Virus record (IMG/VR): IMGVR_UViG_3300043786_000977
Span: 144,909-208,908 of that record
Length of the DNA: 64,000 nucleotides
Strand: one strand, 5' to 3'
Position numbers and translations under genes: made by a program. This document shows positions 3,607-39,330 of this stretch, one piece after another (positions within the stretch are counted from its first letter, which is position 1; every line of letters starts with the position of its first letter). The notes under the pieces are model-generated. The model searched no databases. It saw nothing but the letters and a program-made list of their open reading frames with translations, and was not told the origin of the DNA.

Positions 3607-4359
3607 ATGAAAGATAAATTAGAAGAACAACCGAGTTTGAAGACGCTTACCGGGCGCACACTGATGCTCGTCGACACGCTGCAGGCGACAGTGAAGGCAC
3701 TCAACGAGTTCAGTACACGGGTGATGGCCACGCTGGTTCTCGGCGCGGAACAGGCTGATTCTGAGATCGAGGCCCTAGTTGACCTTGGTTCGATAGGTAA
3801 ACTCTATACGCAACTGCTGGAGGAACTGGATACGCTGCAGCTCGAAGAGTGCTGTAAGCAGGAGGTTATTACGGCTGCGTCGCACATGTGTAAGATACCT
3901 GATCCTGGTAGCGTAGGTACAGGTGTCGCACGGGCCTTGTTCCGTGGTAACCCGCGGAGCCGGCGATATGCTGTGGCGTTGAATCGACTCTTAGTCGCCG
4001 CACATGATCGGCAGCTACCGAATGCGGAACCAGCACCAGCAAAAGCACAGGCGCCTGCCGCTGCACCCGCGGTGCCAGCAAAAGCATCAGTGCCTGCAGC
4101 TAAACCCGCAGCGCCAGTGAGTAAGGCAGCCGGAGCAGATAAAGCTTCAACACCTAAGGCTTCTGTCTTGGCACGTCTGAAAGAAATCAAGATGGCCGGC
4201 CGCCGGACGAAGGGTGCGTTGACGCTGATTGTCACGGACCTAGAGGACAAAAAGCCCGTCACCGATAAGCAACGGAAGTATCTCACAGAGTGTGCGAGTA
4301 AGATGGTTGAACTTGCACCGTTGAAGACCGAACTTGTACGTCTTGCGCAGGCGACGTGA
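3607..4359 (+). CDS. Hypothetical protein with Ala/Pro/Lys-rich linker
   Basis: 250-aa ORF between genes on the coding strand. Confidence 0.65.
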   Translation: MKDKLEEQPSLKTLTGRTLMLVDTLQATVKALNEFSTRVMATLVLGAEQADSEIEALVDLGSIGKLYTQLLEELDTLQLEECCKQEVITAASHMCKIPDPGSVGTGVARALFRGNPRSRRYAVALNRLLVAAHDRQLPNAEPAPAKAQAPAAAPAVPAKASVPAAKPAAPVSKAAGADKASTPKASVLARLKEIKMAGRRTKGALTLIVTDLEDKKPVTDKQRKYLTECASKMVELAPLKTELVRLAQAT

Positions 4360-4435
4360 ACTGTGGTACCCTGACCCTCTGCCGTAGTTGGGTCAGGGTC
4401 CAACTAATACCAGTTAATCCTTCAGGAGTATTCGT

Positions 4436-6355
4436 ATGTCTACCCTTCCTTCGCTTTATTCGCAGTTTATTCATGTATCGCGGTATGCCAAATGGCAAGA
4501 TTCCGTTATGCGGCGTGAAACATGGGATGAGACTGTTACTCGATATCTTGACTTCATGTGTGAAGAACAATGTTCGGGTAAGATAGATGCAACGACGAAG
4601 AGTGAATTAAGAGATGCTATCGGCTCGTTGGCTGTGATGCCTTCTATGCGGTGCATGATGACAGCAGGCAAGGCACTGGCCAGGGATAACGCGGCTGGCT
4701 TCAACTGCAGTGCTGTGGTGATTGATAATCCCGTAGCCTTCGACGAAATGATGTACCTATTGATGTGTGGCGTTGGTGTGGGTTTCAGCGTCGAGCGCCA
4801 GTTCATCAATCAGCTACCTAACGTACCAGCGCTGCGTCGTTCCAAGACCGTAATCAAGGTCGAGGATTCGCGTATTGGTTGGTCCAATGCATTCCGTGAA
4901 CTGTTGAGCATGTTGTACTCCGGCCGGATCCCCGAATGGGATACGAGTGAGGTACGACCAGCCGGTGCACGTTTGAAGACCTTTGGTGGACGAGCTTCTG
5001 GCCCGGCCCCATTGGAAGACCTGTTTCGCTTCTGTATCGGCATATTCCGTGGTGCCGAGGGTCGCAAGCTGAATTCGCTGGAGTGCCATGACATATGCTG
5101 CAAGATCGGCGAAGTGATTGTCATGGGCGGTGTCCGGCGTTCGGCAGAGATCAGTCTGACGAATCCGTCTGATGATCGTATGCGTTACGCTAAGTCAGGT
5201 AATTGGTATGAGACTGCACCGTGGCGGCGCCAAGCCAACATATCGGCAGTGTATACCGAGAAGCCGGGTATGGATGTGTTTTTCCGAGAGTGGCTGGCAC
5301 TCTATGAGTCCAAGTCAGGAGAACGCGGGATCTTCAATCGTGAAGCTGCCCAGGTGCATATGGCCAAGTGCGGGCGACGGGATAACACACACGACTTCAT
5401 CGTTAATCCCTGTGGTGAGATCCTCCTGCGTTCGGGACAGATGTGTAACCTGTCCGAGGCAGTTGTACGTAAGGATGACAATGCGAAGACCTTGAAAGAG
5501 AAGGTGCGCCTTGCAACAATCCTAGGTACCCTGCAGGCTACCCTGACTAACTTCCGGTATCTCCGGCCACACTGGCAGGATAACACACGGGACGAAGCAT
5601 TACTTGGTGTGAGCCTGACAGGTGTCATGGATAACGCGCTGATGTCGGGGCAGAAGGGTAAGACGGAATTGGCAGGTACGTTGGAGGATCTGCGTAAGTC
5701 AGCAGTCCACGTCAATAAGCAGTGGGCTAAGACGCTTGGAATTAATCCAGCTACTGCCATCACAACCAATAAGCCCTCGGGTACTGTCAGTCAGTTGGTT
5801 GACTGCGCCAGTGGGTTGCACCCACGGTTCAGTGAGCATTATATCCGTACGGTACGTGGCGACATGCACGATCCTGTGACGAAGTTGATGCAGGCCTCAG
5901 GGTTTCCGCATGAACCTGATGTAACGAAACCCGATCATACTGTGGTCTTCAGTTTCCCGATAAAGGCGCCTGAGGGTTGTGAAACTGTGGCCGATGTGGA
6001 TGCGATCGCCCAGTTGGAACTCTGGCGTACCTACCAGGAACACTGGTGTGAACACAAGCCGTCCATGACTGTCTATGTAAAGGAACATCAGTGGATGGAA
6101 GTCGGTGCCTGGGTCTATAAGCACTTCGATGTGATCAGCGGTGTTACATTCCTGCCTGCATCGGATCACTGCTACGCTCAAGCCCCTTATCAGGACATAT
6201 CTGCGAAGGAGTATGAAGCACGCGTGGCTAAGATGCCCACGTCTGTGGATTGGGCGCAATTAGCCCAATACGAGAAGGACGACTCTTCCGTGAACACACG
6301 CGAATATGCTTGCAGCGGTGATAGTTGTGAGACCGTTGATTTGACTTCGAAATGA
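4436..6355 (+). CDS. nrdJ: Class II (adenosylcobalamin-dependent) ribonucleotide reductase
   Basis: PSMR, AGFNC, GGVRRSA, NPCGEI thiyl-radical motif, TTNKPSGTVSQL, C-terminal CSGDSC; no small subunit nearby. Confidence 0.93.
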   Translation: MSTLPSLYSQFIHVSRYAKWQDSVMRRETWDETVTRYLDFMCEEQCSGKIDATTKSELRDAIGSLAVMPSMRCMMTAGKALARDNAAGFNCSAVVIDNPVAFDEMMYLLMCGVGVGFSVERQFINQLPNVPALRRSKTVIKVEDSRIGWSNAFRELLSMLYSGRIPEWDTSEVRPAGARLKTFGGRASGPAPLEDLFRFCIGIFRGAEGRKLNSLECHDICCKIGEVIVMGGVRRSAEISLTNPSDDRMRYAKSGNWYETAPWRRQANISAVYTEKPGMDVFFREWLALYESKSGERGIFNREAAQVHMAKCGRRDNTHDFIVNPCGEILLRSGQMCNLSEAVVRKDDNAKTLKEKVRLATILGTLQATLTNFRYLRPHWQDNTRDEALLGVSLTGVMDNALMSGQKGKTELAGTLEDLRKSAVHVNKQWAKTLGINPATAITTNKPSGTVSQLVDCASGLHPRFSEHYIRTVRGDMHDPVTKLMQASGFPHEPDVTKPDHTVVFSFPIKAPEGCETVADVDAIAQLELWRTYQEHWCEHKPSMTVYVKEHQWMEVGAWVYKHFDVISGVTFLPASDHCYAQAPYQDISAKEYEARVAKMPTSVDWAQLAQYEKDDSSVNTREYACSGDSCETVDLTSK

Positions 6356-11351: not shown

Positions 11352-11485
11352 CGAAGCGTGGAATGCAGGAAAAAGGGAAGAAGGGTCAGCTGTGCATTAA
11401 GTGTGGCAAGGAGCGCGCTTCACGTACGGGCATGGGTGGCCGGTTACTCTGCAACAAGTGTTTCACAAAAGAATGTGGACTATAA
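11348..11485 (+). CDS. Small Zn-finger protein (45 aa, not in ORF track)
   Basis: SD GGAGG; CIKC...CNKC. Confidence 0.5.
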   Translation: MTKRGMQEKGKKGQLCIKCGKERASRTGMGGRLLCNKCFTKECGL

Positions 11486-11486
11486 C

Positions 11487-12263
11487 ATGATATATCCAAA
11501 TGACATTGTACCTGTCGAGGTACAGCAGGAGATCGGGCCGCCGTATGACTGGTGTGTCCTGTCAGGTTACACAGGCAGTCACGCGTACGGTACCTATGTC
11601 CCGCCTGAACACGAGTTCGGTACGGATGACGTAGACATAATGGGTGTGATGATCCCGCCGGTTGAGTATTACCTGGGGTTCCGCAAGATGGATCACTGTC
11701 TCTACCAGAAGGGTAAGTGGGATATCCTGCTTTACGAGTTCAGACATTTCGTTAGTCTGTTACTCAAGGGTAATCCAAACGTCATCGGTATGCTCTGGTT
11801 ACGACCTGAGGACTACCTGATCAGAAGTCCAGCGATGGATGAACTAATTGCCAATCGACATCTGTTCTGCGGGAAGCATGTCTTCGACTCATTTCGTGGT
11901 TATGCCTCAGGCCAATTATATAAGATGCAGCATGCTGTACGTGAAGGGTACATGGGCGAGAAGCGGCGTAAACTCGTTGAGCGTTTCGGGTACGACGTAA
12001 AGAATGCTGCGCATATGATTCGGCTACTGCGTATGGGCCAGGAGTTCCTCAAGACTGGCACGTTACAGGTGTATCGTACAGACGACGCACAGCAGCTGAT
12101 CGAGATCAAGACAGGGCTGTGGCCGTTGGATCGTGTGATGGACTTGGCGCATGCTGAGTTTGATTGGTTGGATGCTGCCTATGCAGCAAGCACATTACCT
12201 GAGAAACCGCAAACAGCGGAAGTTGAAGCAAGGGTGATTAGCATACTGAAAGGTCGTATATGA
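11487..12263 (+). CDS. Nucleotidyltransferase (DNA pol beta superfamily, YcgL/Nuc-transf-like)
   Basis: GSHAYG...DDVDIMGV; KGNPN; YDVKNAAHMIRLL. Confidence 0.85.
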   Translation: MIYPNDIVPVEVQQEIGPPYDWCVLSGYTGSHAYGTYVPPEHEFGTDDVDIMGVMIPPVEYYLGFRKMDHCLYQKGKWDILLYEFRHFVSLLLKGNPNVIGMLWLRPEDYLIRSPAMDELIANRHLFCGKHVFDSFRGYASGQLYKMQHAVREGYMGEKRRKLVERFGYDVKNAAHMIRLLRMGQEFLKTGTLQVYRTDDAQQLIEIKTGLWPLDRVMDLAHAEFDWLDAAYAASTLPEKPQTAEVEARVISILKGRI

Positions 12264-12666: not shown

Positions 12667-13755
12667 ATGGATCAAGGTCTTAGTCAGGTTGCTATACAGG
12701 GAATCATTCGCCGTAAGATAGGAGATTGGCTGGAGTCGATTGACAACATGGAGTTGCGGCTCTTCCTGTCTGATAAAATCATCGTTACGGGCGGCGCGAT
12801 CGCATCGTTGCTTCGCGGGGAGAAGGTGAACGATTACGATGTCTACTTCACAACGCGGGAAGCAGCCACACGCGTAGCCAGTTATTACTTGGCACGTTTC
12901 GCAGCGAATCCGCCAAAGAGTATGCAGCAGTCACCCGTACGTATGTACGTGGATGATAAGTCAGATCCCGACCGTGTACGTATTGTTATCCAGTCGGCCG
13001 GTGTGATATCTACCGACGGTGATGGCGGCAAGTACGAGTACTTCGAAACGACACCGCCCGCGAATGCCGCAGATTACGTTGCTGACGTGGTAGCCCCGGT
13101 CGTGGATGAAGACGAACAGCGGCTTACCAACGAACTCAGGGACTCGACTACGGATGCCGGTATACCCGACAGTGATAATCCCGAGCTCATGCGCCTCGTC
13201 GAACAGGCAGCCACTGAGGACCTGCCGCCGATGGCGACAGGTCCAGGGGCCAAGGCAAAGAACAGGTATCGGCCGATCTTCCTGTCCGGTAATGCCATCA
13301 CCTTGAGCGACGAGATTCAGCTCATCATCAGGTTCTATGGCCCCGCGGAGGAACTCCACAAGAACTTCGATTTCGTCCACTGCACGAACTACTGGCAGTC
13401 AGAGATGCGTGTCGGCGCGAAGTTCGGGGGTACCCTGGTGGTAAACACGCCAGCCCTTATGAGCCTGATGTCCAAACGTCTGGGGTATATCGGTAGCCGG
13501 TATCCGTTATGCAGTTTGATCCGGACCCGTAAGTTCGTCCGGCGCGGTTGGACGGCGCCGGCCGGTGTGTTCATCAAGGCGATGCACCAGTGCCTGGCCC
13601 TGGACTGGAATAAAATCGAAACCTGGAGAGAACAGTTGACCGGGGTGGATACCGCCTACTTTGCTGAAATCATCGAGATCCTCAAGCGGGATCAGGCAGC
13701 AGGGAAGTCCATAGACTCGGCATACGTCGTTGCCTTAATCGATAGGTTAATTTAA
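12667..13755 (+). CDS. Poly(A) polymerase/CCA-enzyme head-like nucleotidyltransferase
   Basis: VTGGAIASLL...NDYDVYF (GG...DxD) and FDFVH motifs. Confidence 0.7.
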   Translation: MDQGLSQVAIQGIIRRKIGDWLESIDNMELRLFLSDKIIVTGGAIASLLRGEKVNDYDVYFTTREAATRVASYYLARFAANPPKSMQQSPVRMYVDDKSDPDRVRIVIQSAGVISTDGDGGKYEYFETTPPANAADYVADVVAPVVDEDEQRLTNELRDSTTDAGIPDSDNPELMRLVEQAATEDLPPMATGPGAKAKNRYRPIFLSGNAITLSDEIQLIIRFYGPAEELHKNFDFVHCTNYWQSEMRVGAKFGGTLVVNTPALMSLMSKRLGYIGSRYPLCSLIRTRKFVRRGWTAPAGVFIKAMHQCLALDWNKIETWREQLTGVDTAYFAEIIEILKRDQAAGKSIDSAYVVALIDRLI

Positions 13756-13786
13756 CGCGTCTTCGCGTTATAACATATTGTTTAAG

Positions 13787-14348
13787 GATAGCGTTAGCAT
13801 CCTGATGACCAGGGGTATAACCCCTTCATTTCAGGACCAGTGCACCCTGACAGGCAGGTTTCGAGCTGACCCCATGCGGCGGCCGAGTAGCTGTAGCCGT
13901 GGCGGTGCACTGGTCTCTGATCTGACACCAACCCCTTCCCCGAGGCTGTACACATTCAGTTTGACCCCTATACGGGGCTCGGGGAGTCCTCGCCCGGTTG
14001 GCCCGCAGGGGCTTACCACAATATGTGGAGCCGGGTTACTTTCCTAGGTGAGCGACTGATGGGAACCGCATCTTCCTGTATCGTGCGTGTTCCTGATCGG
14101 CAGTCGCTCACTCCCGGTTACCGCGGGGTTCGTCTCATACGTACTCCTCCCCGCGGGTAACCGGGCTCCTTCTCTTCCTCCCTGCCCCTCAGGGGTTTGA
14201 CCACAATACGTGGGTGGGAGACGCTATTACACCGATGATCCCACGATCAAGCGACACCGTCGTGGGGGAGGTTGGGCCATTAGTTGGGCGGTCGATTGGT
14301 AGCGTTAACTGACCTCGACGCTGCTTAAAGTCACGGACCGTGAGGTCA
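13787..14348 (+). ncRNA. Large multi-stem structured non-coding element (family unassigned)
   Basis: Perfect 12-bp (13835-46/13904-15) and 11-bp (14048-58/14101-11) stems, 16-bp stem (14113-28/14149-65), long-range closing stem, 3' pseudoknot; G-U pairs favour the + strand. Confidence 0.65.
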
Positions 14349-14379
14349 TTCTTTCCCTCTGTCAACGCTGTAAAAGGTG

Positions 14380-14409
14380 TTGACAAGGGTTCATGCCCTG
14401 TGTTTTAAT
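14380..14409 (+). promoter_or_regulatory. Sigma70-like promoter upstream of the small-RNA array
   Basis: TTGACA-18nt-TTTAAT with upstream TG; the -35 sits in a hairpin TGTCAAC..GTTGACA. Confidence 0.5.
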
Positions 14410-14455
14410 ACACACGTTTACCCACTATAGGGCACCGATCTTTCATATTTTAACA

Positions 14456-14596
14456 TGCGGATAGTAGGAGTCAGGCAGCAGCATAAACTACAGGACCTAG
14501 ATGTCGTTGGTTCAAGTCCAACACCCTGCGCCAATACAGTTGCAGGGTTAGCTCAGTTGGTAGAGCACCAGGAAAAAACTGATTCTGTAATCCGCA
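14456..14596 (+). ncRNA. YrlA-like Y RNA (permuted tRNA mimic)
   Basis: T-arm GTTGG-TTCAAGT-CCAAC precedes a loop-closed acceptor (ACCCTGC-GCCA..GCAGGGT) and D-arm GCTC-AGTTGGTA-GAGC; 5' and 3' ends pair (TGCGGAT/ATCCGCA); lies upstream of the Ro-like gene. Confidence 0.75.
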
Positions 14597-14614
14597 CCAT
14601 CTTCGAGGTTGTTA

Positions 14615-15363
14615 AGAGTGGCACAGCAAAAACTCGTCCTCACGGACATTGCTTTCCCAGCAAACCAGAGTCCACTCTGTATTTTTCATTTTAGCTTCGG
14701 ACTGTAGAATTCGTACAGCAAACAACTACCTCCTGCATAAGGAGGTTTTCGCCCTCATATGCGAAAACTATATCGAATTCGTAGTCCTCTTTTTCTCATC
14801 GTTCGTAAGGATAGCGCAGCAATCAATCGCCCTTCGGGGCACTAGCCTGTTAAGCTAACCACAGTCTATCCTGTGACCTTTCATTTTCGTACACTCTGTG
14901 ACTTCAGCAACTATCGTAGGGATAGCGCAGCAATCAACCGCCCTTCGGGGCACTAGTTATTGGAACTAACCATAGCCTATCCCGTGACTTTTCACTTTTC
15001 AACGCACTCTGTGACTTAAGCGAGCACCGTAGGAATGAGTCGGCAGTCGGCCCTTAACCGGGCGCTACTTCGTCCGAAAGGATGCATGAAAAACTGTGGT
15101 ACCGGGCACATATGTGTTAACGGGCCACGCGGTGTGATCATTGATTACGCACACTGATATAATAAAAGGTAATCCGTTGCGCACGAGTCGTTATCTTGGG
15201 CGGTCCCGCCGAGGGACTTAAATAACCGTGCAAGTATTCTGTGGTGCTAGCTTATCTGTTCTTGTTAAGGATGACGCAGCAAATATCACCCCGCAAGGGG
15301 CGATGGGTTCGATTCCCATAGAGCCCGTTAGGGCTTTGTCAATGGCGACAAATAAGTCATCCT
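14615..15363 (+). ncRNA. Array of six CAGCAA-marked stem-closed small-RNA units (putative Y-like RNAs)
   Basis: Units at 14615-78, 14699-787, 14808-72, 14919-83, 15032-240, 15268-363. Each has a 5' stem strand, then CAGCAA (CGGCAG in unit 15032), internal hairpins, a 3' stem strand, then GT and a U-rich tail. Confidence 0.65.
14804..15020 (+). repeat. Diverged ~111-nt tandem duplication of two RNA units
   Basis: CGTARGGATAGCGCAGCAATCAAYCGCCCTTCGGGGCACTAG... repeated with compensatory substitutions. Confidence 0.9.
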
Positions 15364-15379
15364 GTACTTTGTTATGTAA

Positions 15380-15413
15380 GGCCTCGTCCGAGTGGACGGG
15401 GCCTTTGCCTTTT
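15380..15413 (+). terminator. Terminator-like hairpin between the RNA array and the Ro-like gene
   Basis: GGCCTCGTCC-GAGT-GGACGGGGCC followed by TTTGCCTTTT. Confidence 0.5.
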
Positions 15414-15441
15414 GTAGACGACAACAATAAGGAGACGATGA

Positions 15442-16935
15442 ATGCGTAAGACAACGTCAATGATCAGAGGTCACAATTCAGATCCCTTGCACGCGCACAG
15501 CGGGGATCATCACCTGGAGTTCTTCTCGAAGGCGGGTTCGCTCTTCGTGAAGGGCAAGGGTAAGAAAGGCGCCAGCTACTACGGTACCAGTTCCGAGACG
15601 ACAGCCCTGTCACTCTTCCAGCCCATGTGGATGTCGCCAGGCCTGGAGAACAAGACACTGGCCATGCAGTTGCTGTTCTGGTTACGTGATCCCCGCGGTG
15701 GCGCCGGCAATCGGTCGGGTTTCCGGGAAATCGTGCGCTGGTTGGCGCAGCAGCCTGAGACGTCGGTTGATCCGTCGGGTGCCACTTGGCTGGGTGTCAA
15801 CCTGTTGCGGGTTCCGGAATGGGGACGCTGGGACGATCTGGCAGAACTGTACGGTACGTCACTCGAGCCGCTTGTCGCGGGCGTCTGGACAGAAGCGATC
15901 ATGCGGAAGGAGCACCTGGCTTGTAAGTGGGCCAAGGTTGATATGGTACCGCTGCAGCGCGCCCTGAAAATCAATGAGCGTGGGTTGCGGATGTTGATCG
16001 TACCGCCCCGTGCCACGATCGTTGAGCGTGCTATGTGCGCGGGTGACTGGACTGCCGTGGACTACTCGAAGATTCCGAGTAAGGCGATGTCCATGTACAC
16101 GAAGGCGTTCCGGATGCACGACAAGCCCCGGTTCGACGAGTACAAGGCGGCACTGGTGCGTGGGGATAAAGGCGTGAAGATTAACGCTAGTGTGTTGTTC
16201 CCGCACGACTGTGTGAAGCAGGCGAAGACTGGTGATCAGATCATCGCTGAAGCGCAGTTTAAAGCGTTGCCCGATTTCATCGGTGGCACGGATCGGCGTA
16301 TCATCGTGTTGGCTGACCGGTCTGGTTCGATGGGTGCTATAGCGCAGGATACGATTACGAACGATAATGTGGCTGTGGCCTTGGCGCTGTATTGCAGCGA
16401 TCGGCTGGGTCCGCAGAATCCGTTCTATCGGCAGTATCTGGAATTCCAGAGTACACCGTTCTGGGTGGATTGGAAAAACGAGACGTTTGTGCAAGCCTGT
16501 CGGTCCGGTCAAGGATTCGCGGGTAGCACGAACTTACAAGGGGCGCTTGACGCTATATTGAAGCAGGGCAAAGCTTGGAGAGTCCCTCCGGCACAGATGC
16601 CTACGATGCTTCTGATCGTCAGCGATATGCAGTTCGATAACCACGTTACTGGGGGAACCCGGATGATAGCCTGTCACGGAACTGAACAGACTGTGGTTGA
16701 GAAATGTATGCAACAGTGGGAAGCTGCTGGTTATCAGCGGCCGACTATTGTTTTCTGGAATCTTGCAGGCTACGCAGGGCAACCTGCGCAAGCACAGACA
16801 CCGAACACTGCCCTTGTGTCCGGTTTCTCACCTGCCATACTGAAATCCATACTGTCTGGTAAAGAAGTTTTACCCCGAGAGGTCATGCTCCGGGCAATAG
16901 CTAAATATCAGGTAGAGGTCCCCTGCGTGGGGTAA
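15442..16935 (+). CDS. Ro60/TROVE-related RNA-binding protein (DUF2828-type, C-terminal vWA)
   Basis: LFWLRDPRGGAG, RWDDL, ACKW, DYSKIPSKAM, INASVLFPHD, vWA LADRSGSM, STNLQ, IVSDMQFD, IVFWNL, LVSGFSP. Confidence 0.85.
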   Translation: MRKTTSMIRGHNSDPLHAHSGDHHLEFFSKAGSLFVKGKGKKGASYYGTSSETTALSLFQPMWMSPGLENKTLAMQLLFWLRDPRGGAGNRSGFREIVRWLAQQPETSVDPSGATWLGVNLLRVPEWGRWDDLAELYGTSLEPLVAGVWTEAIMRKEHLACKWAKVDMVPLQRALKINERGLRMLIVPPRATIVERAMCAGDWTAVDYSKIPSKAMSMYTKAFRMHDKPRFDEYKAALVRGDKGVKINASVLFPHDCVKQAKTGDQIIAEAQFKALPDFIGGTDRRIIVLADRSGSMGAIAQDTITNDNVAVALALYCSDRLGPQNPFYRQYLEFQSTPFWVDWKNETFVQACRSGQGFAGSTNLQGALDAILKQGKAWRVPPAQMPTMLLIVSDMQFDNHVTGGTRMIACHGTEQTVVEKCMQQWEAAGYQRPTIVFWNLAGYAGQPAQAQTPNTALVSGFSPAILKSILSGKEVLPREVMLRAIAKYQVEVPCVG

Positions 16936-16960
16936 CACCATGATTCAGATTACATGACCA

Positions 16961-17001
16961 GGAGATGCGGGCTCATCCGAGCCCGCACTCCTCTTATCTT
17001 T
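16961..17001 (+). terminator. Rho-independent terminator-like hairpin
   Basis: TGCGGGCTC-ATCC-GAGCCCGCA plus pyrimidine-rich tail. Confidence 0.55.
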
Positions 17002-17030: not shown

Positions 17031-17552
17031 ATGAGAAGTATGAAGTGGCTCAGTGGCTGCGTGTTGATTACCGTCATCGTCGGACTGTTGTTCGCAGGCG
17101 GCTGTACATCGAATCAGAAGACAACGATCGCTCGGCACGCGGGCATGGCCTCGGCCGTGACGTGGCTCGGTGTGGACAATCCAACGACCGAGGAAATCGC
17201 AGCGGTTCAGGGCATCGTCAATTTGATCCAGACCAACGTGGCGCGTGTTGCCGTCGGCGGCTCGTACTACACGGTCATTATGCCCATCGCGCAGGATTAT
17301 ATCACGGTCTATGCGAAACCGAACATACAACCGATGTGCTCGTTGGGTGCCGCGTGGTTGTTATCCGGTATCGATCTCGTGTTCGCTTTGAATCCGTCCT
17401 GGGCTACAGAACAGCAGGAAGTGTGCGCGATTGCACAGGCATTCTGCGAAGGTGCCAAGCAGGGATTGGCGCTGGCTCCGGATAGCCCGGCAGTCATGGC
17501 AGCCAAGGGACAGACCGACGTACGTGTGGTGCGCAAGCGCCAGTTACGCTAA
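17031..17552 (+). CDS. Putative lipoprotein
   Basis: Signal peptide ending LFAGG-C; SD AGGAG. Confidence 0.7.
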   Translation: MRSMKWLSGCVLITVIVGLLFAGGCTSNQKTTIARHAGMASAVTWLGVDNPTTEEIAAVQGIVNLIQTNVARVAVGGSYYTVIMPIAQDYITVYAKPNIQPMCSLGAAWLLSGIDLVFALNPSWATEQQEVCAIAQAFCEGAKQGLALAPDSPAVMAAKGQTDVRVVRKRQLR

Positions 17553-17760
17553 TCTAGAAGCACAGGATACAGTATCGATGAACGTGCCTGGGCTTCTGTA
17601 CAACACGCGGGCACACACATGCCCGCGGTCCATGCCGGGTTAGACCCGGTGAGAGCCTACGGGCTCTCTTTACCTATTGGGGTTAATATCGTACATTGTT
17701 ACGTTATAACATACTGTTAGAGAATAGGTTTAGTTACCATCACAACAACAGGAGGTTCAG

Positions 17761-39056: not shown

Positions 39057-39330
39057 CACAGGTACGTAAAGCAGAACGGGTACTGATCACCCCTAAGCTT
39101 AACACTCACAGGTACCCCGCACAGGTACCTGTGACATATTGGCATACCTGTGACATATTGTCACACCTGTCGTCACATGTGCACTTACCCGGTAGGTGTT
39201 CATTTATGTACAGGCATATAACAGGTTAATAGACAGCCCCGGCCTCACTGGTACAGTAAACATTTGGGGGTATGAGGAACCAAAACCCAAAACCCTTAAT
39301 CGTATACCGTTATACGTTATAACAGGTACA
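39057..39330. repeat. Intergenic cluster of ACAGG(TAC) direct and inverted repeats
   Basis: CACAGGTAC x3, 16-nt direct repeat TACCTGTGACATATTG x2, inverted repeat TGTGAC-ATATT-GTCACA. Confidence 0.75.

What the first reader, a model, noticed from the sequence alone, without database searches (positions are those of the whole stretch)
13787..14348. ~560-nt ornate non-coding RNA upstream of the Y-RNA/Ro locus
Seen: no credible ORF. Perfect stems GACCAGTGCACC/GGTGCACTGGTC and GTGAGCGACTG/CAGTCGCTCAC, a 16-bp stem, and long-range closure GATAGCGT(13787)/ACGCTATT(14221). A twice-repeated module CAGGGG..ACCACAATAYGTGG. A 3' H-type pseudoknot (14298-305/14318-25, loop 14310-16 pairing with 14342-48). 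Two alternative partners for GTAACCGGG (possible switch). Its start AAGGATAGCG is identical to that of an array unit at 14808. Known: phage tRNA regions host giant RNAs such as GOLLD and ROOL. Inference: this is a member of one of those families or a new large ncRNA, possibly also bound by the Ro-like protein.
Basis: partly seen in the sequence, partly recalled or inferred. Interest (0 to 1): 0.75.

Follow-up and report, generated by a model that had tools for sequence, protein, structure and literature searches.

The report
Orphan structured RNA beside phage Y-RNAs
A freshwater jumbo phage has a real, unusually well-folded non-coding stretch of about 530 bases beside its Ro60-like/Y-RNA genes, but it belongs to no known RNA family, only its 270-base core stays constant between strains, and nothing like it was found outside a very narrow phage lineage.

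Summary
The stems are real. The stretch is the most strongly folding ORF-free gap of this 209-kb freshwater jumbo phage: z -7.45 on the + strand, -4.04 on the - strand.

It is not GOLLD, ROOL or any Rfam family (no match at E<=10).

Close relatives redraw it:
- 13784-13830 is a conserved leader behind a phage promoter motif. It also occurs in relatives that lack everything downstream.
- Hairpin H1 (13834-13916) and the 3' "pseudoknot" domain (14229-14346) are each missing or replaced in some strain.
- The constant part is a 270-nt core (13959-14228). It has three copies of a pentaloop hairpin found nowhere else in the genome, and two long hairpins.
- One of those, H3, matches the terminator-like hairpin of relatives that lack the rest, with two compensatory pair changes.

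The core uses 11 G-U pairs on the + strand against 1 on the - strand, which points to RNA.

No homologue turned up in IMG/VR, JGI metagenomes, GTDB genomes or about 1.1 Mb of related loci. No RNA run was listed.

Best reading: an accessory, promoter-driven, lineage-specific structured RNA at the 5' edge of a Ro60-like/Y-RNA cassette. It probably presents repeated hairpins to a binding factor. Function is unproven.

The parts
13747..13775 (+). P1: promoter-like motif TTAATT-N16-GTTATAACA, overlapping the end of the Gad2-family gene. The inferred transcription start is about 13782-13785.
   Evidence: CGTTATAACA occurs 4 times in the window against 0.21 expected. Five genome sites share both boxes. 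The same motif precedes the analogous non-coding regions in L023 and L029. Transcription itself is inferred, not shown.
13784..13831 (+). Conserved leader, not part of the variable element. It has the hairpin GGAUAGC-GUUA-GCAUCC (13786-13802) and the small hairpin AGGGGU-AUA-ACCCCU (13811-13825) followed by UCAUUU. Its 5' end and its 3' flank (AUCCUG(A)UGACC...UUCAUUU) resemble the Y-like unit at 14807-14890.
   Evidence: It is present at about 88-90% identity in relatives that lack everything downstream (L016, L017) or carry a different sequence there (L018, L019, L021). The first hairpin keeps pairing through a U-A to A-U change in L019. The 10-mer is shared with 14807-14816. Alignment.
13834..13916 (+). 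H1: a long hairpin with a perfect 12-13-bp base. It is peripheral and dispensable.
   Evidence: Inverted repeat I1 and the MFE fold. In run X6 a contig replaces 13833-13958 with 45 other bases yet continues into the core (table 8, record 6).
13959..14228 (+). The core. A long-range helix (13963-13986 with 14178-14197) closes a multi-branch domain that holds the M1 domain, H2 and H3. Imperfect 27-nt direct repeats flank it (13959-85 and 14195-221). This is the only part present in every strain that carries the element.
   Evidence: Both variant boundaries coincide with the core's ends: X6 rejoins at 13959 and X9 leaves at 14228. Closing-helix pair probabilities are 0.72-0.96. Direct repeat D1. 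Fold: 88 pairs with 11 G-U on + (-129.4 kcal/mol); 79 pairs with 1 G-U on - (-117.7).
13965..13977 (+). M0: pentaloop hairpin CCCC-UAUAC-GGGG. Relative to M1 and M2 the third stem pair is changed on both sides.
   Evidence: The local hairpin is not in the MFE fold (probability 0.02); there its 5' arm takes part in the closing helix.
14016..14028 (+). M1: pentaloop hairpin CCAC(A)-AUA-(U)GUGG, inside the domain 13992-14036.
   Evidence: pair probability 0.78. No substitution in X6, X7, X9 or X10.
14047..14112 (+). H2: a long hairpin with a 12-bp base and a variable tip.
   Evidence: In the X9 contig 13 of its 17 substitutions fall here. Unpaired positions change at 7 of 20 and paired positions at 6 of 46 (Fisher p=0.05). 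There is one compensatory double change (14066C>U with 14089G>A), three changes that keep pairing only on the + strand or improve a wobble, and one break (14052G>A). The X9 allele still folds at -27.2 on + against -21.1 on -.
14113..14190 (+). H3: a 16-bp hairpin with one bulge (14113-14165), followed by a pyrimidine tract CUCCUUCUCUUCCUCCCUGCCCCUC. It is the counterpart of the terminator-like hairpin plus U-run of relatives that lack the rest of the element.
   Evidence: Covariance model R1 aligns it to L019 2316-2430 and L021 515-629. The pairwise alignment is 77% identical, with G-C to A-U and C-G to U-A compensatory pairs and one A-U to G-U change. In the window the U-run has degenerated.
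14201..14213 (+). M2: pentaloop hairpin CCAC-AAUAC-GUGG.
   Evidence: pair probability 0.80.
14229..14346 (+). 3' domain: hairpin 14298-306/14317-325, and a loop segment 14310-16 complementary to 14342-48. It is peripheral and dispensable.
   Evidence: The X9 contig passes from 14228 directly to sequence like 14347 onward (table 7). The pseudoknot complementarity was read directly from the sequence and has not been tested by covariation.
14361..14409 (+). P2 region, outside the element and marking its right border: inverted repeat GTCAAC...GTTGACA, a terminator-like hairpin at 14386-14399, and a TTTAAT box. It is conserved upstream of the Y-like arrays of relatives.

Best explanation
The finding is a real, lineage-specific, structured non-coding unit. 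It sits at the 5' edge of an accessory cassette (Y-RNA-like array plus a Ro60-fold protein gene) that is inserted into the 5' leader of a 173-aa gene of a freshwater jumbo phage.

**Shown**
- It lies directly behind a promoter motif that recurs in this genome and in relatives.
- Its constant part is a 270-nt core (13959-14228). A long-range helix closes the core, which carries three copies of a unique pentaloop hairpin and two long hairpins.
- H3 corresponds to the terminator-like hairpin that stands alone at this spot in relatives.
- H1 and the 3' domain are optional additions.
- The pairing is better on the + strand, and the few natural substitutions mostly keep it.

**Inferred**
- It is transcribed rightward from P1 as an RNA of about 0.45-0.6 kb.
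- The original terminator has lost its U-run and has been built into a larger fold.
- The RNA works as a stable scaffold or decoy that presents the three identical hairpins to a sequence-specific binding factor, phage or host. It may act alongside the neighbouring Ro60-like/Y-RNA system in RNA-damage counter-defence.

It is not a member of GOLLD, ROOL or any other curated RNA family.
For: - **Fold:** z -6.47 and -7.45 on + against -4.77 and -4.04 on -, the best of 17 ORF-free gaps. The core has 11 G-U pairs on + and 1 on -, and is 11.7 kcal/mol more stable on +.
- **Promoter motif:**
- **Not coding:** no gene calls and no protein relatives. A 1-nt insertion in the X9 allele also argues against coding.
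- **Core boundaries:** two independent strain variants define them.
- **Hairpin module:** three copies, all on +, 0.09 expected in the genome, and 1 in 1.2 Mb of other loci.
- **H3:** matches the L019/L021 hairpin with two compensatory pairs.
- **H2:** the substitution pattern favours pairing on +.
- **Conservation against flank:** the X9 core has 3 changes in 216 nt outside 14040-14096, while its right flank looks like the roughly 80%-identical L019 lineage. The core is therefore either strongly conserved or recently exchanged as a unit.
- **Cassette:** present or absent as a block in relatives.
- **Neighbour:** the adjacent protein has a Ro60/Rsr fold.
Against: - No transcription evidence: no RNA run was listed.
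- No homologue was found outside a narrow lineage, so there is no statistical covariation test.
- The element is dispensable. 84-90%-identical relatives lack it.
- Long perfect stems also fit DNA-level palindromes.
- One substitution in X9 and one in X10 break predicted pairs.
- The binding factor is purely hypothetical.
- The local M0 hairpin is not favoured in the predicted fold.
Confidence: 0.42

Rival explanations
1. It is a cis-acting leader or attenuator. The element controls read-through from P1 into the Y-RNA/Ro60-like cassette. H3 is the former terminator. CCGG-containing segments offer competing pairings, and the three pentaloop hairpins act like nut/boxB-type sites for an antitermination factor.
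For: - H3 corresponds to a hairpin plus U-run that sits alone between P1 and P2 in L019/L021.
- The alternative helix 14029-35/14113-19 has ensemble probability 0.24, against 0.67 for the H3 base. A fold that uses it is only 2.6 kcal/mol above the MFE.
- The element lies between a promoter and downstream genes.
Against: - H3 in the window has no U-run, so there is little left to regulate.
- P2 gives the array its own promoter.
- The full anti-terminator conformer (13992-99 with 14158-65) is 11.8 kcal/mol worse than the MFE.
- No riboswitch or leader family matches.
- None of the switch segments varies, so there is nothing to test them with.
Confidence: 0.2
2. It has no sequence-specific RNA function. 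It is an accretion of palindromes and duplicated hairpins in a recombination-prone intergenic hot spot at a cassette border, comparable to the promoter-stem-loop cassettes of T4-type phages. Alternatively it is a small selfish DNA module.
For: - Near relatives show large indels at exactly this spot: the whole cassette, the whole element, H1 and the 3' domain.
- L018 carries a third, different sequence after the leader.
- The stems are very long and perfect, and the - strand also folds significantly.
- The analogous position in L023 holds 1.2 kb of unrelated, equally palindromic sequence, z -9.2 on + and -8.8 on -.
- 27-nt direct repeats flank the core.
- The element is dispensable in relatives.
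Against: - The core shows strand asymmetry: 11 G-U pairs on + against 1 on -.
- Wobble-type and compensatory changes keep + strand pairing.
- Unpaired linkers in the core are invariant in X9 while the H2 tip varies.
- All three hairpin copies have the same orientation.
- No terminal inverted repeats or target-site duplications were seen.
Confidence: 0.22
3. It is a giant Y-RNA-like molecule. Its 5' end (AAGGAUAGCGU) pairs with 14221-14228 (ACGCUAUU) as in the neighbouring Y-like units, and the closing stem is bound by the Ro60-fold protein.
For: - The 10-mer is shared with the unit at 14807.
- The 8-bp closure ends exactly where the X9 allele ends. In X9 the following U residues would lengthen it to about 10 bp.
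- The Ro60-fold gene lies 1.1 kb downstream.
Against: - An 8-bp match to the leader somewhere in 560 nt is expected by chance (my estimate, about 2-3).
- The leader forms a local hairpin that is conserved, with a compensatory change, in relatives without the element, and the MFE fold uses it.
- The element has no (G)CAGCAA motif and no tRNA-like arm.
- The YrlA model does not match it.
Confidence: 0.1
4. It is a member of GOLLD or ROOL, the large ornate RNAs of phage tRNA regions.
For: Only general likeness: a size of about 0.5 kb, many hairpins, a phage setting, and tRNA genes 4-14 kb upstream.
Against: Neither family's covariance model matches at the gathering score, nor at E<=10 with relaxed filters on 2 kb.
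Confidence: 0.01

Closest known systems
GOLLD (RF01998) and ROOL (RF03087) large ornate RNAs
   Same: Several hundred nucleotides long, multi-branched, encoded by phages near tRNA or RNA genes, function unknown.
   Different: There is no covariance-model match. The distribution is extremely narrow instead of spanning many taxa. Peripheral domains are gained and lost between near-identical strains. No multimer-forming conserved core can be recognised.
Bacterial and phage Y RNAs (YrlA, RF02553) with Ro60/Rsr
   Same: It lies in the same non-coding block as about 7 Y-like units and next to a Ro60-fold protein. The leader shares the 5' 10-mer of one unit. A 5'/3' closing helix can be drawn.
   Different: It is four to five times longer than Y RNAs (80-130 nt, PMC4201824). 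It has no tRNA-like domain, lacks the (G)CAGCAA motif of the local units, and does not match the YrlA model.
Rho-independent terminator / attenuator leaders
   Same: H3 corresponds to a GC-rich hairpin followed by a U-run in relatives. Competing pairings exist. It sits between a promoter and downstream genes.
   Different: The U-run is lost in the window. About 450 nt of extra structure surround the hairpin. No known leader or riboswitch family matches.
Phage processive-antitermination RNA sites (lambda nut boxB, HK022 put), from general knowledge
   Same: Small hairpins with 5-nt loops are repeated in a promoter-proximal transcript upstream of terminator-like hairpins.
   Different: The loop sequence (WAUAY) is unlike boxB (GNRA-like pentaloops). 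No N-like protein was identified, and nothing was tested.
PeSL-type promoter-stem-loop cassette borders of T4-type phages, from general knowledge
   Same: A promoter plus stem-loop stands at the border of a gene cassette that is present or absent between close relatives.
   Different: That would explain the leader and the cassette indel. It does not explain the 270-nt core with its strand-specific pairing.

Membership tests
GOLLD (Rfam RF01998) | Match to the family covariance model at or above the gathering score | tested here: not met
   No match at gathering over the whole window, nor at E<=10 on 13600-15600.
ROOL (Rfam RF03087) | Match to the family covariance model at or above the gathering score | tested here: not met
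   no match.
tmRNA / RNase P / group I and II introns / riboswitches (Rfam) | Covariance-model match | tested here: not met
   ARAGORN finds no tmRNA or tRNA in 13700-14400.
Y RNA / YrlA | Match to the YrlA model, or a tRNA-like domain | tested here: not met
   The only YrlA-like hit is 14478-14591, outside the element, at 32.8 bits against a gathering score of 69. No T arm or tRNA was found in the element.
Y RNA / YrlA | A long stem formed by the 5' and 3' ends that carries the Ro60 binding site | tested here: inconclusive
   An 8-bp complementarity 13787-94/14221-28 exists. It is at chance level and competes with a conserved local hairpin. Its 3' end coincides with the X9 boundary.
Y RNA / YrlA | Bound by Ro60 | not testable with these tools
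   Needs immunoprecipitation. The neighbouring protein has a Ro60 fold.
Local Y-like array units (this phage group) | GUARG + stem + (G)CAGCAA ... stem + CYGUR unit architecture | tested here: not met
   Read. The leader shares only the 5' 10-mer and the 3' flank. The core contains no GCAGCAA.
Intrinsic terminator | GC-rich hairpin directly followed by a U-run | tested here: not met
   The H3 hairpin is present, but its tail is CUCCUUCUCUUCC. The counterpart in L019 has ACUUCUUCUUUUU. The scan tool flags neither, because their loops exceed 8 nt.
Structured non-coding RNA in general | Statistically supported covariation among homologues | tested here: inconclusive
   Only a few alleles are available. 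There are 2 compensatory pairs in H3. In H2 there is 1 compensatory change, 3-4 changes that preserve pairing and 1 break. There are not enough sequences for R-scape.
Structured non-coding RNA in general | Transcription of the predicted strand | not testable with these tools
   No RNA run was listed. Only a promoter motif supports it.
Replication origin / DNA cruciform | AT-rich unwinding element, iterons, GC-skew switch | tested here: not met
   The region is 58-59% GC with no skew inflection. The only direct repeats are the hairpin modules. Cruciform formation cannot be excluded by computation.

The most novel reading that the evidence does not exclude
Jumbo-phage Ro60-like/Y-RNA cassettes carry large ornate RNAs at their 5' edge that keep their position but not their sequence: 0.5 kb here, about 1.2 kb in L023 and about 0.9 kb in L029. 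Each lies between the same P1-type and P2-type promoter motifs. In this reading they form a new class of exchangeable RNA modules that work with the Ro60-like ribonucleoprotein, as substrates, decoys or scaffolds in counter-defence against host RNA damage. The 270-nt core here would be one such module, and it moves between phage lineages as a unit.
Probability: 0.15. Interest if true: 0.75.

Novelty: new variant of a known kind. Interest (0 to 1): 0.4.

Why it matters
If the core is a working RNA, it would add a new partner to the little-studied phage Ro60/Y-RNA systems. Those systems sit here among RNA-repair and anti-defence genes (RlaP, Gad2, tRNAs). It would also be a natural example of a terminator hairpin built into a larger fold that presents three identical hairpins.

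The strain-level variants already show which parts are optional, which gives a ready-made dissection for experiments.

If it is not functional, the locus is still a clear case of rapid hairpin turnover at a cassette border. It also warns that an "ornate" fold in a single sequence can be a mosaic of independent pieces.

Tried and rejected
- **Rfam:** searched at gathering and at E<=10; nothing found for the element, for relatives, or for the second structured region.
- **BLAST:** blastn of 13756-15441 against INPHARED phages gave no match. blastn and nhmmer against 14 Gad2-linked IMG/VR loci gave nothing.
- **Module pattern:** CAGGGGN{3,4}ACCACAATAYGTGG gave 0 hits each in IMG/VR, JGI metagenomes and GTDB genomes.
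- **Other patterns:** the H3 pattern gave 0 hits in IMG/VR. The leader 19-mer gave only chance hits plus L116, which is the same contig as L021.
- **Covariance model R1 (core):**
  - No hit in 92 loci (995 kb), in further relatives, or in five complete related jumbo-phage records.
  - The only exception was the H3 counterpart in L019/L021/L022.
  - A run with filters off failed internally.
- **Spurious-ORF trick to fish out diverged copies:** the exact look-up found nothing. The search of 1.84 billion representatives returned only low-complexity hits.
- **RNA runs:** none was listed.
- **Paralogues in the genome:** none found.
- **Rejected readings:**
  - A protein-coding remnant: no relatives, a frameshifting indel in X9, and no codon periodicity in the substitutions.
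  - A replication origin: GC-rich, no iterons, no skew switch.
  - A decayed tRNA or Y unit for the core: no matching motifs.
- **Relatives search:** The genome search 'relatives' is not available for virus records.

Full report
**Setting**

The window is the last 64 kb of a 208,908-bp virus record with direct terminal repeats. The same sequence turns up in freshwater, lake and sediment metagenomes. An independent Logan assembly is identical over 7.5 kb around the finding.

The finding lies in a 1,686-nt stretch (13756-15441) with no long ORF and no called gene.
- Upstream are an RlaP nucleotidyltransferase gene (11358-12263) and a Gad2-family gene (12667-13755; PF26128).
- Downstream is a DUF2828/DUF7788 gene (15442-16935). 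Its predicted structure matches Ro60/Rsr over its whole length. The hits include D. radiodurans Rsr at E 1.5e-6 and Thermus phage phiLo Ro60 at E 5.6e-6, with TM about 0.5.
- Between the finding and that gene lies an array of about seven Y-RNA-like units. One gives a weak YrlA hit at 14478-14591.
- Ten tRNA genes lie 4-14 kb upstream.

Jumbo phages with ROT/TROVE proteins, RlaP and RNA ligases have been described as carrying RNA-repair systems (PMC7824862). Y RNAs next to phage Ro60 genes are also known (PMC4201824).

Mostly yes.
The third extends to a 16-bp stem with one bulge.
- The stretch folds much better than dinucleotide shuffles, and better on + than on -: z -6.47 against -4.77, or -7.45 against -4.04 for 13756-14359. 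It is the most structured of the 17 ORF-free gaps I tested in the genome.
- The repeated module is real and occurs three times, not twice. The hairpin CCNC-WAUAY-GN'GG occurs at 13965, 14016 and 14201, all on the + strand, and nowhere else in 209 kb, against 0.09 expected. It occurs once in 1.2 Mb of other phage loci. The first copy differs from the others on both sides of one stem pair.

Two items are not more than chance would give.
- The 8-bp closure 13787-94/14221-28 is one.
- The 7-nt pseudoknot complementarity is the other.

The 10-mer AAGGATAGCG is shared exactly with the unit at 14807.

**Not a known family**

No Rfam 15 model reaches its gathering score in the window apart from tRNAs. 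With relaxed filters and E<=10 on 13600-15600, nothing touches 13787-14348. GOLLD, ROOL, tmRNA, RNase P, introns and riboswitches are therefore not supported.

**What close relatives show**

I fetched relatives through the two flanking proteins and compared them.

| Relative | Similarity to the window phage | What it has at this spot |
|---|---|---|
| L016/L017 | 90% nt identity | Jump from 13830 straight to 16986. They lack the element, the Y-like array and the Ro60-like gene. The cassette therefore sits in the 5' leader of the 173-aa gene (17031-17552). |
| L019/L021/L022 | 84-88% nt identity in the upstream flank | Keep the array and the Ro60-like gene. In place of 13802-14358 they have about 92 nt: a leader hairpin, then a GC-rich hairpin followed by ACUUCUUCUUUUU. 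|
| L018 | 87% nt identity | Carries yet another sequence after 13830, then ends in a sequencing adapter. |

The first 44 nt of the finding (13787-13830) are thus a conserved leader shared by all of these, not part of the variable element. The leader's first hairpin keeps pairing in L019 through a U-A to A-U change.

Contigs of four other runs were laid on the locus.
- In X6, 13833-13958 (hairpin H1 and its linker) is replaced by 45 other bases, and the contig rejoins at 13959.
- In X9, a contig covers 13956-14228 and then continues directly into sequence like 14347 onward. The 3' "pseudoknot" domain is therefore absent.
- X9's right flank resembles the L019 lineage more than the window.

The constant part is therefore 13959-14228. 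Its ends coincide with a pair of imperfect 27-nt direct repeats that contain hairpin copies M0 and M2.

**The core**

The predicted fold has a long-range closing helix, 13963-86 with 14178-97, at pair probabilities of 0.72-0.96. It encloses a small domain with hairpin M1, the long hairpin H2 (14047-14112) and the long hairpin H3 (14113-14165). M2 follows just outside.

A covariance model of the core (R1) found one thing in relatives. H3 and its pyrimidine tail align with the terminator-like hairpin of L019/L021/L022. The pairwise alignment shows G-C to A-U and C-G to U-A double changes, plus one A-U to G-U change. So the hairpin that stands alone in those phages is built into a larger fold here, and its U-run has decayed to CUCCUUCUCUUCC.

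**RNA or DNA?**
- The core's + strand fold has 88 pairs including 11 G-U, at -129.4 kcal/mol. The - strand fold has 79 pairs with 1 G-U, at -117.7 kcal/mol.
- Of the 17 substitutions in X9, 14 fall in 14040-14096 and 13 of those lie within H2.
- Within H2, unpaired positions change at 7 of 20 and paired ones at 6 of 46 (p=0.05).
- Of the seven changes at paired positions in X9, six keep or improve pairing on the + strand. These include one compensatory double change. One breaks a pair.
- The X9 allele of H2 still folds at -27.2 kcal/mol on + against -21.1 on -.
- One change in X10 breaks a weak 3-bp helix.
- Outside 14040-14096, X9 differs at only 3 of 216 positions, although its flank is of the roughly 80%-identical lineage.

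This is suggestive but thin. It rests on a handful of alleles.

**Transcription**

No RNA run was listed. The indirect evidence is a bipartite motif, TTAATN-N15-16-GTTATAACA.
- It occurs five times in the genome with both boxes.
- One copy sits at 13747-13775.
- The same motif stands at the start of the analogous non-coding regions of L023 and L029.

A second conserved motif closes the element on the right and opens the Y-like array in all lineages. It is an inverted repeat GTCAAC...GTTGACR, followed after about 17 nt by TTWARK.

**Distribution**

I found no homologue of the core beyond this narrow lineage.
- INPHARED phages: no match.
- IMG/VR, JGI metagenomes and GTDB genomes, searched by pattern: no hits.
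- R1 searches of 92 loci (995 kb) around DUF2828 and Gad2 genes, of further relatives, and of five complete related jumbo-phage records: nothing.
- Paralogues in the genome: none.
- Relatives of the longest ORF at protein level: none.

Near-identical records may be hidden from some collections, as the tools warn.

**Analogous regions**

More distant relatives hold long, highly structured, unrelated sequence at the same place, between the same two promoter motifs.
- L023 has Gad2 at 58% and the Ro60-like protein at 73% identity. Its region is about 1.2 kb, with z -9.2 on + and -8.8 on - for 3640-4600.
- L029 has the Ro60-like protein at 62% identity. Its region is about 0.9 kb, with z -5.0 on + and -3.0 on -.

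L029 and L123 also have GC-rich hairpin blocks between Y-like units. A structured block at the head of the array is thus a recurring feature of this phage group, but its sequence is not conserved.

**Mechanism**

What is shown:
- a discrete 270-nt core with + strand-specific pairing
- a triplicated unique hairpin
- an embedded former terminator
- optional peripheral domains
- a promoter motif upstream
- membership in an accessory cassette

From this I infer a P1-driven, stable non-coding RNA whose core presents three identical hairpins to a binding factor. It may act with the neighbouring Ro60-like/Y-RNA system (confidence about 0.4).

The rivals are:
- A cis-acting attenuator or antitermination leader. 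A competing helix 14029-35/14113-19 has probability 0.24, and a fold using it is only 2.6 kcal/mol above the optimum. However, the full anti-terminator conformer is 11.8 kcal/mol worse, and H3 has lost its U-run.
- Non-functional hairpin accretion, or a selfish DNA module at a recombination hot spot.
- A giant Y RNA closed by 13787-94/14221-28.
- GOLLD or ROOL membership, which is effectively excluded.

**Verdict**

The feature is real and unusually structured, and it is probably an RNA. It is an orphan, strain-variable element with a 270-nt constant core.

The interest is moderate. The anatomy is clean and testable. But the distribution is very narrow, there is no transcription evidence, and there are too few alleles for a covariation test.

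Noticed in passing
G000:C1:68550-69112 (outside the window; locus L112 551-1113): A second ORF-free stretch of about 560 nt folds strongly and mainly on one strand: z -5.7 on +, -2.0 on -. It has no Rfam match at E<=1 and no similarity to the core model.
   Followed up: partly
window 14460-15377: An array of about seven Y-RNA-like units, each built as GUARG + stem + (G)CAGCAA ... stem + CYGUR. Two carry tRNA-like T arms: 14478-14591 (weak YrlA hit at 32.8 bits) and 15272-15377. A terminator-like hairpin at 15378-15405 ends the array. Relatives have much longer arrays (L029 3380-5950, L123 1-2130).
   Followed up: partly
window 15442-16935: The DUF2828/DUF7788 protein has no significant sequence match to solved structures (Ro60 at E 0.77). 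Its predicted structure nevertheless matches Ro60/Rsr and phage phiLo Ro60 over the full length. At least 548 relatives are encoded in IMG/VR contigs.
   Followed up: yes
window 13831-16985: The whole block (structured element, Y-like array and Ro60-like gene) is absent from 90%-identical relatives L016/L017. In those, the leader joins directly to the 5' region of the 173-aa gene. It is an accessory cassette inserted into a 5' leader.
   Followed up: yes
window 12667-13755 and 11358-12263: The gene just upstream belongs to the Gad2 family (PF26128; named after an anti-Gabija protein) in precomputed annotations, although the local Pfam copy did not list it. An RlaP RNA-repair nucleotidyltransferase gene precedes it. 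Together with the tRNAs this looks like a counter-defence / RNA-repair island.
   Followed up: partly
window 13747-13775, 17683-17711, 39296-39324; genome 46757-46789, 120271-120303: A bipartite motif TTAATN-N15-16-GTTATAACA recurs on the + strand. It is probably a phage promoter class.
   Followed up: partly
L029 5674-5814 and L123 1823-1960: A small ORF of 45-46 aa with two CxxCxGxG-like motifs sits inside the Y-like arrays of two relatives. The window has no counterpart.
   Followed up: no
L018 3779-3800: The Logan contig ends in a Nextera adapter sequence (CTGTCTCTTATACACATCT). Its last bases are therefore not phage sequence.
   Followed up: no
L023 3640-4600: About 1 kb of non-coding sequence made almost wholly of long perfect hairpins, folding equally well on both strands: z -9.2 and -8.8. 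It occupies the same position as the finding but is unrelated in sequence.
   Followed up: partly
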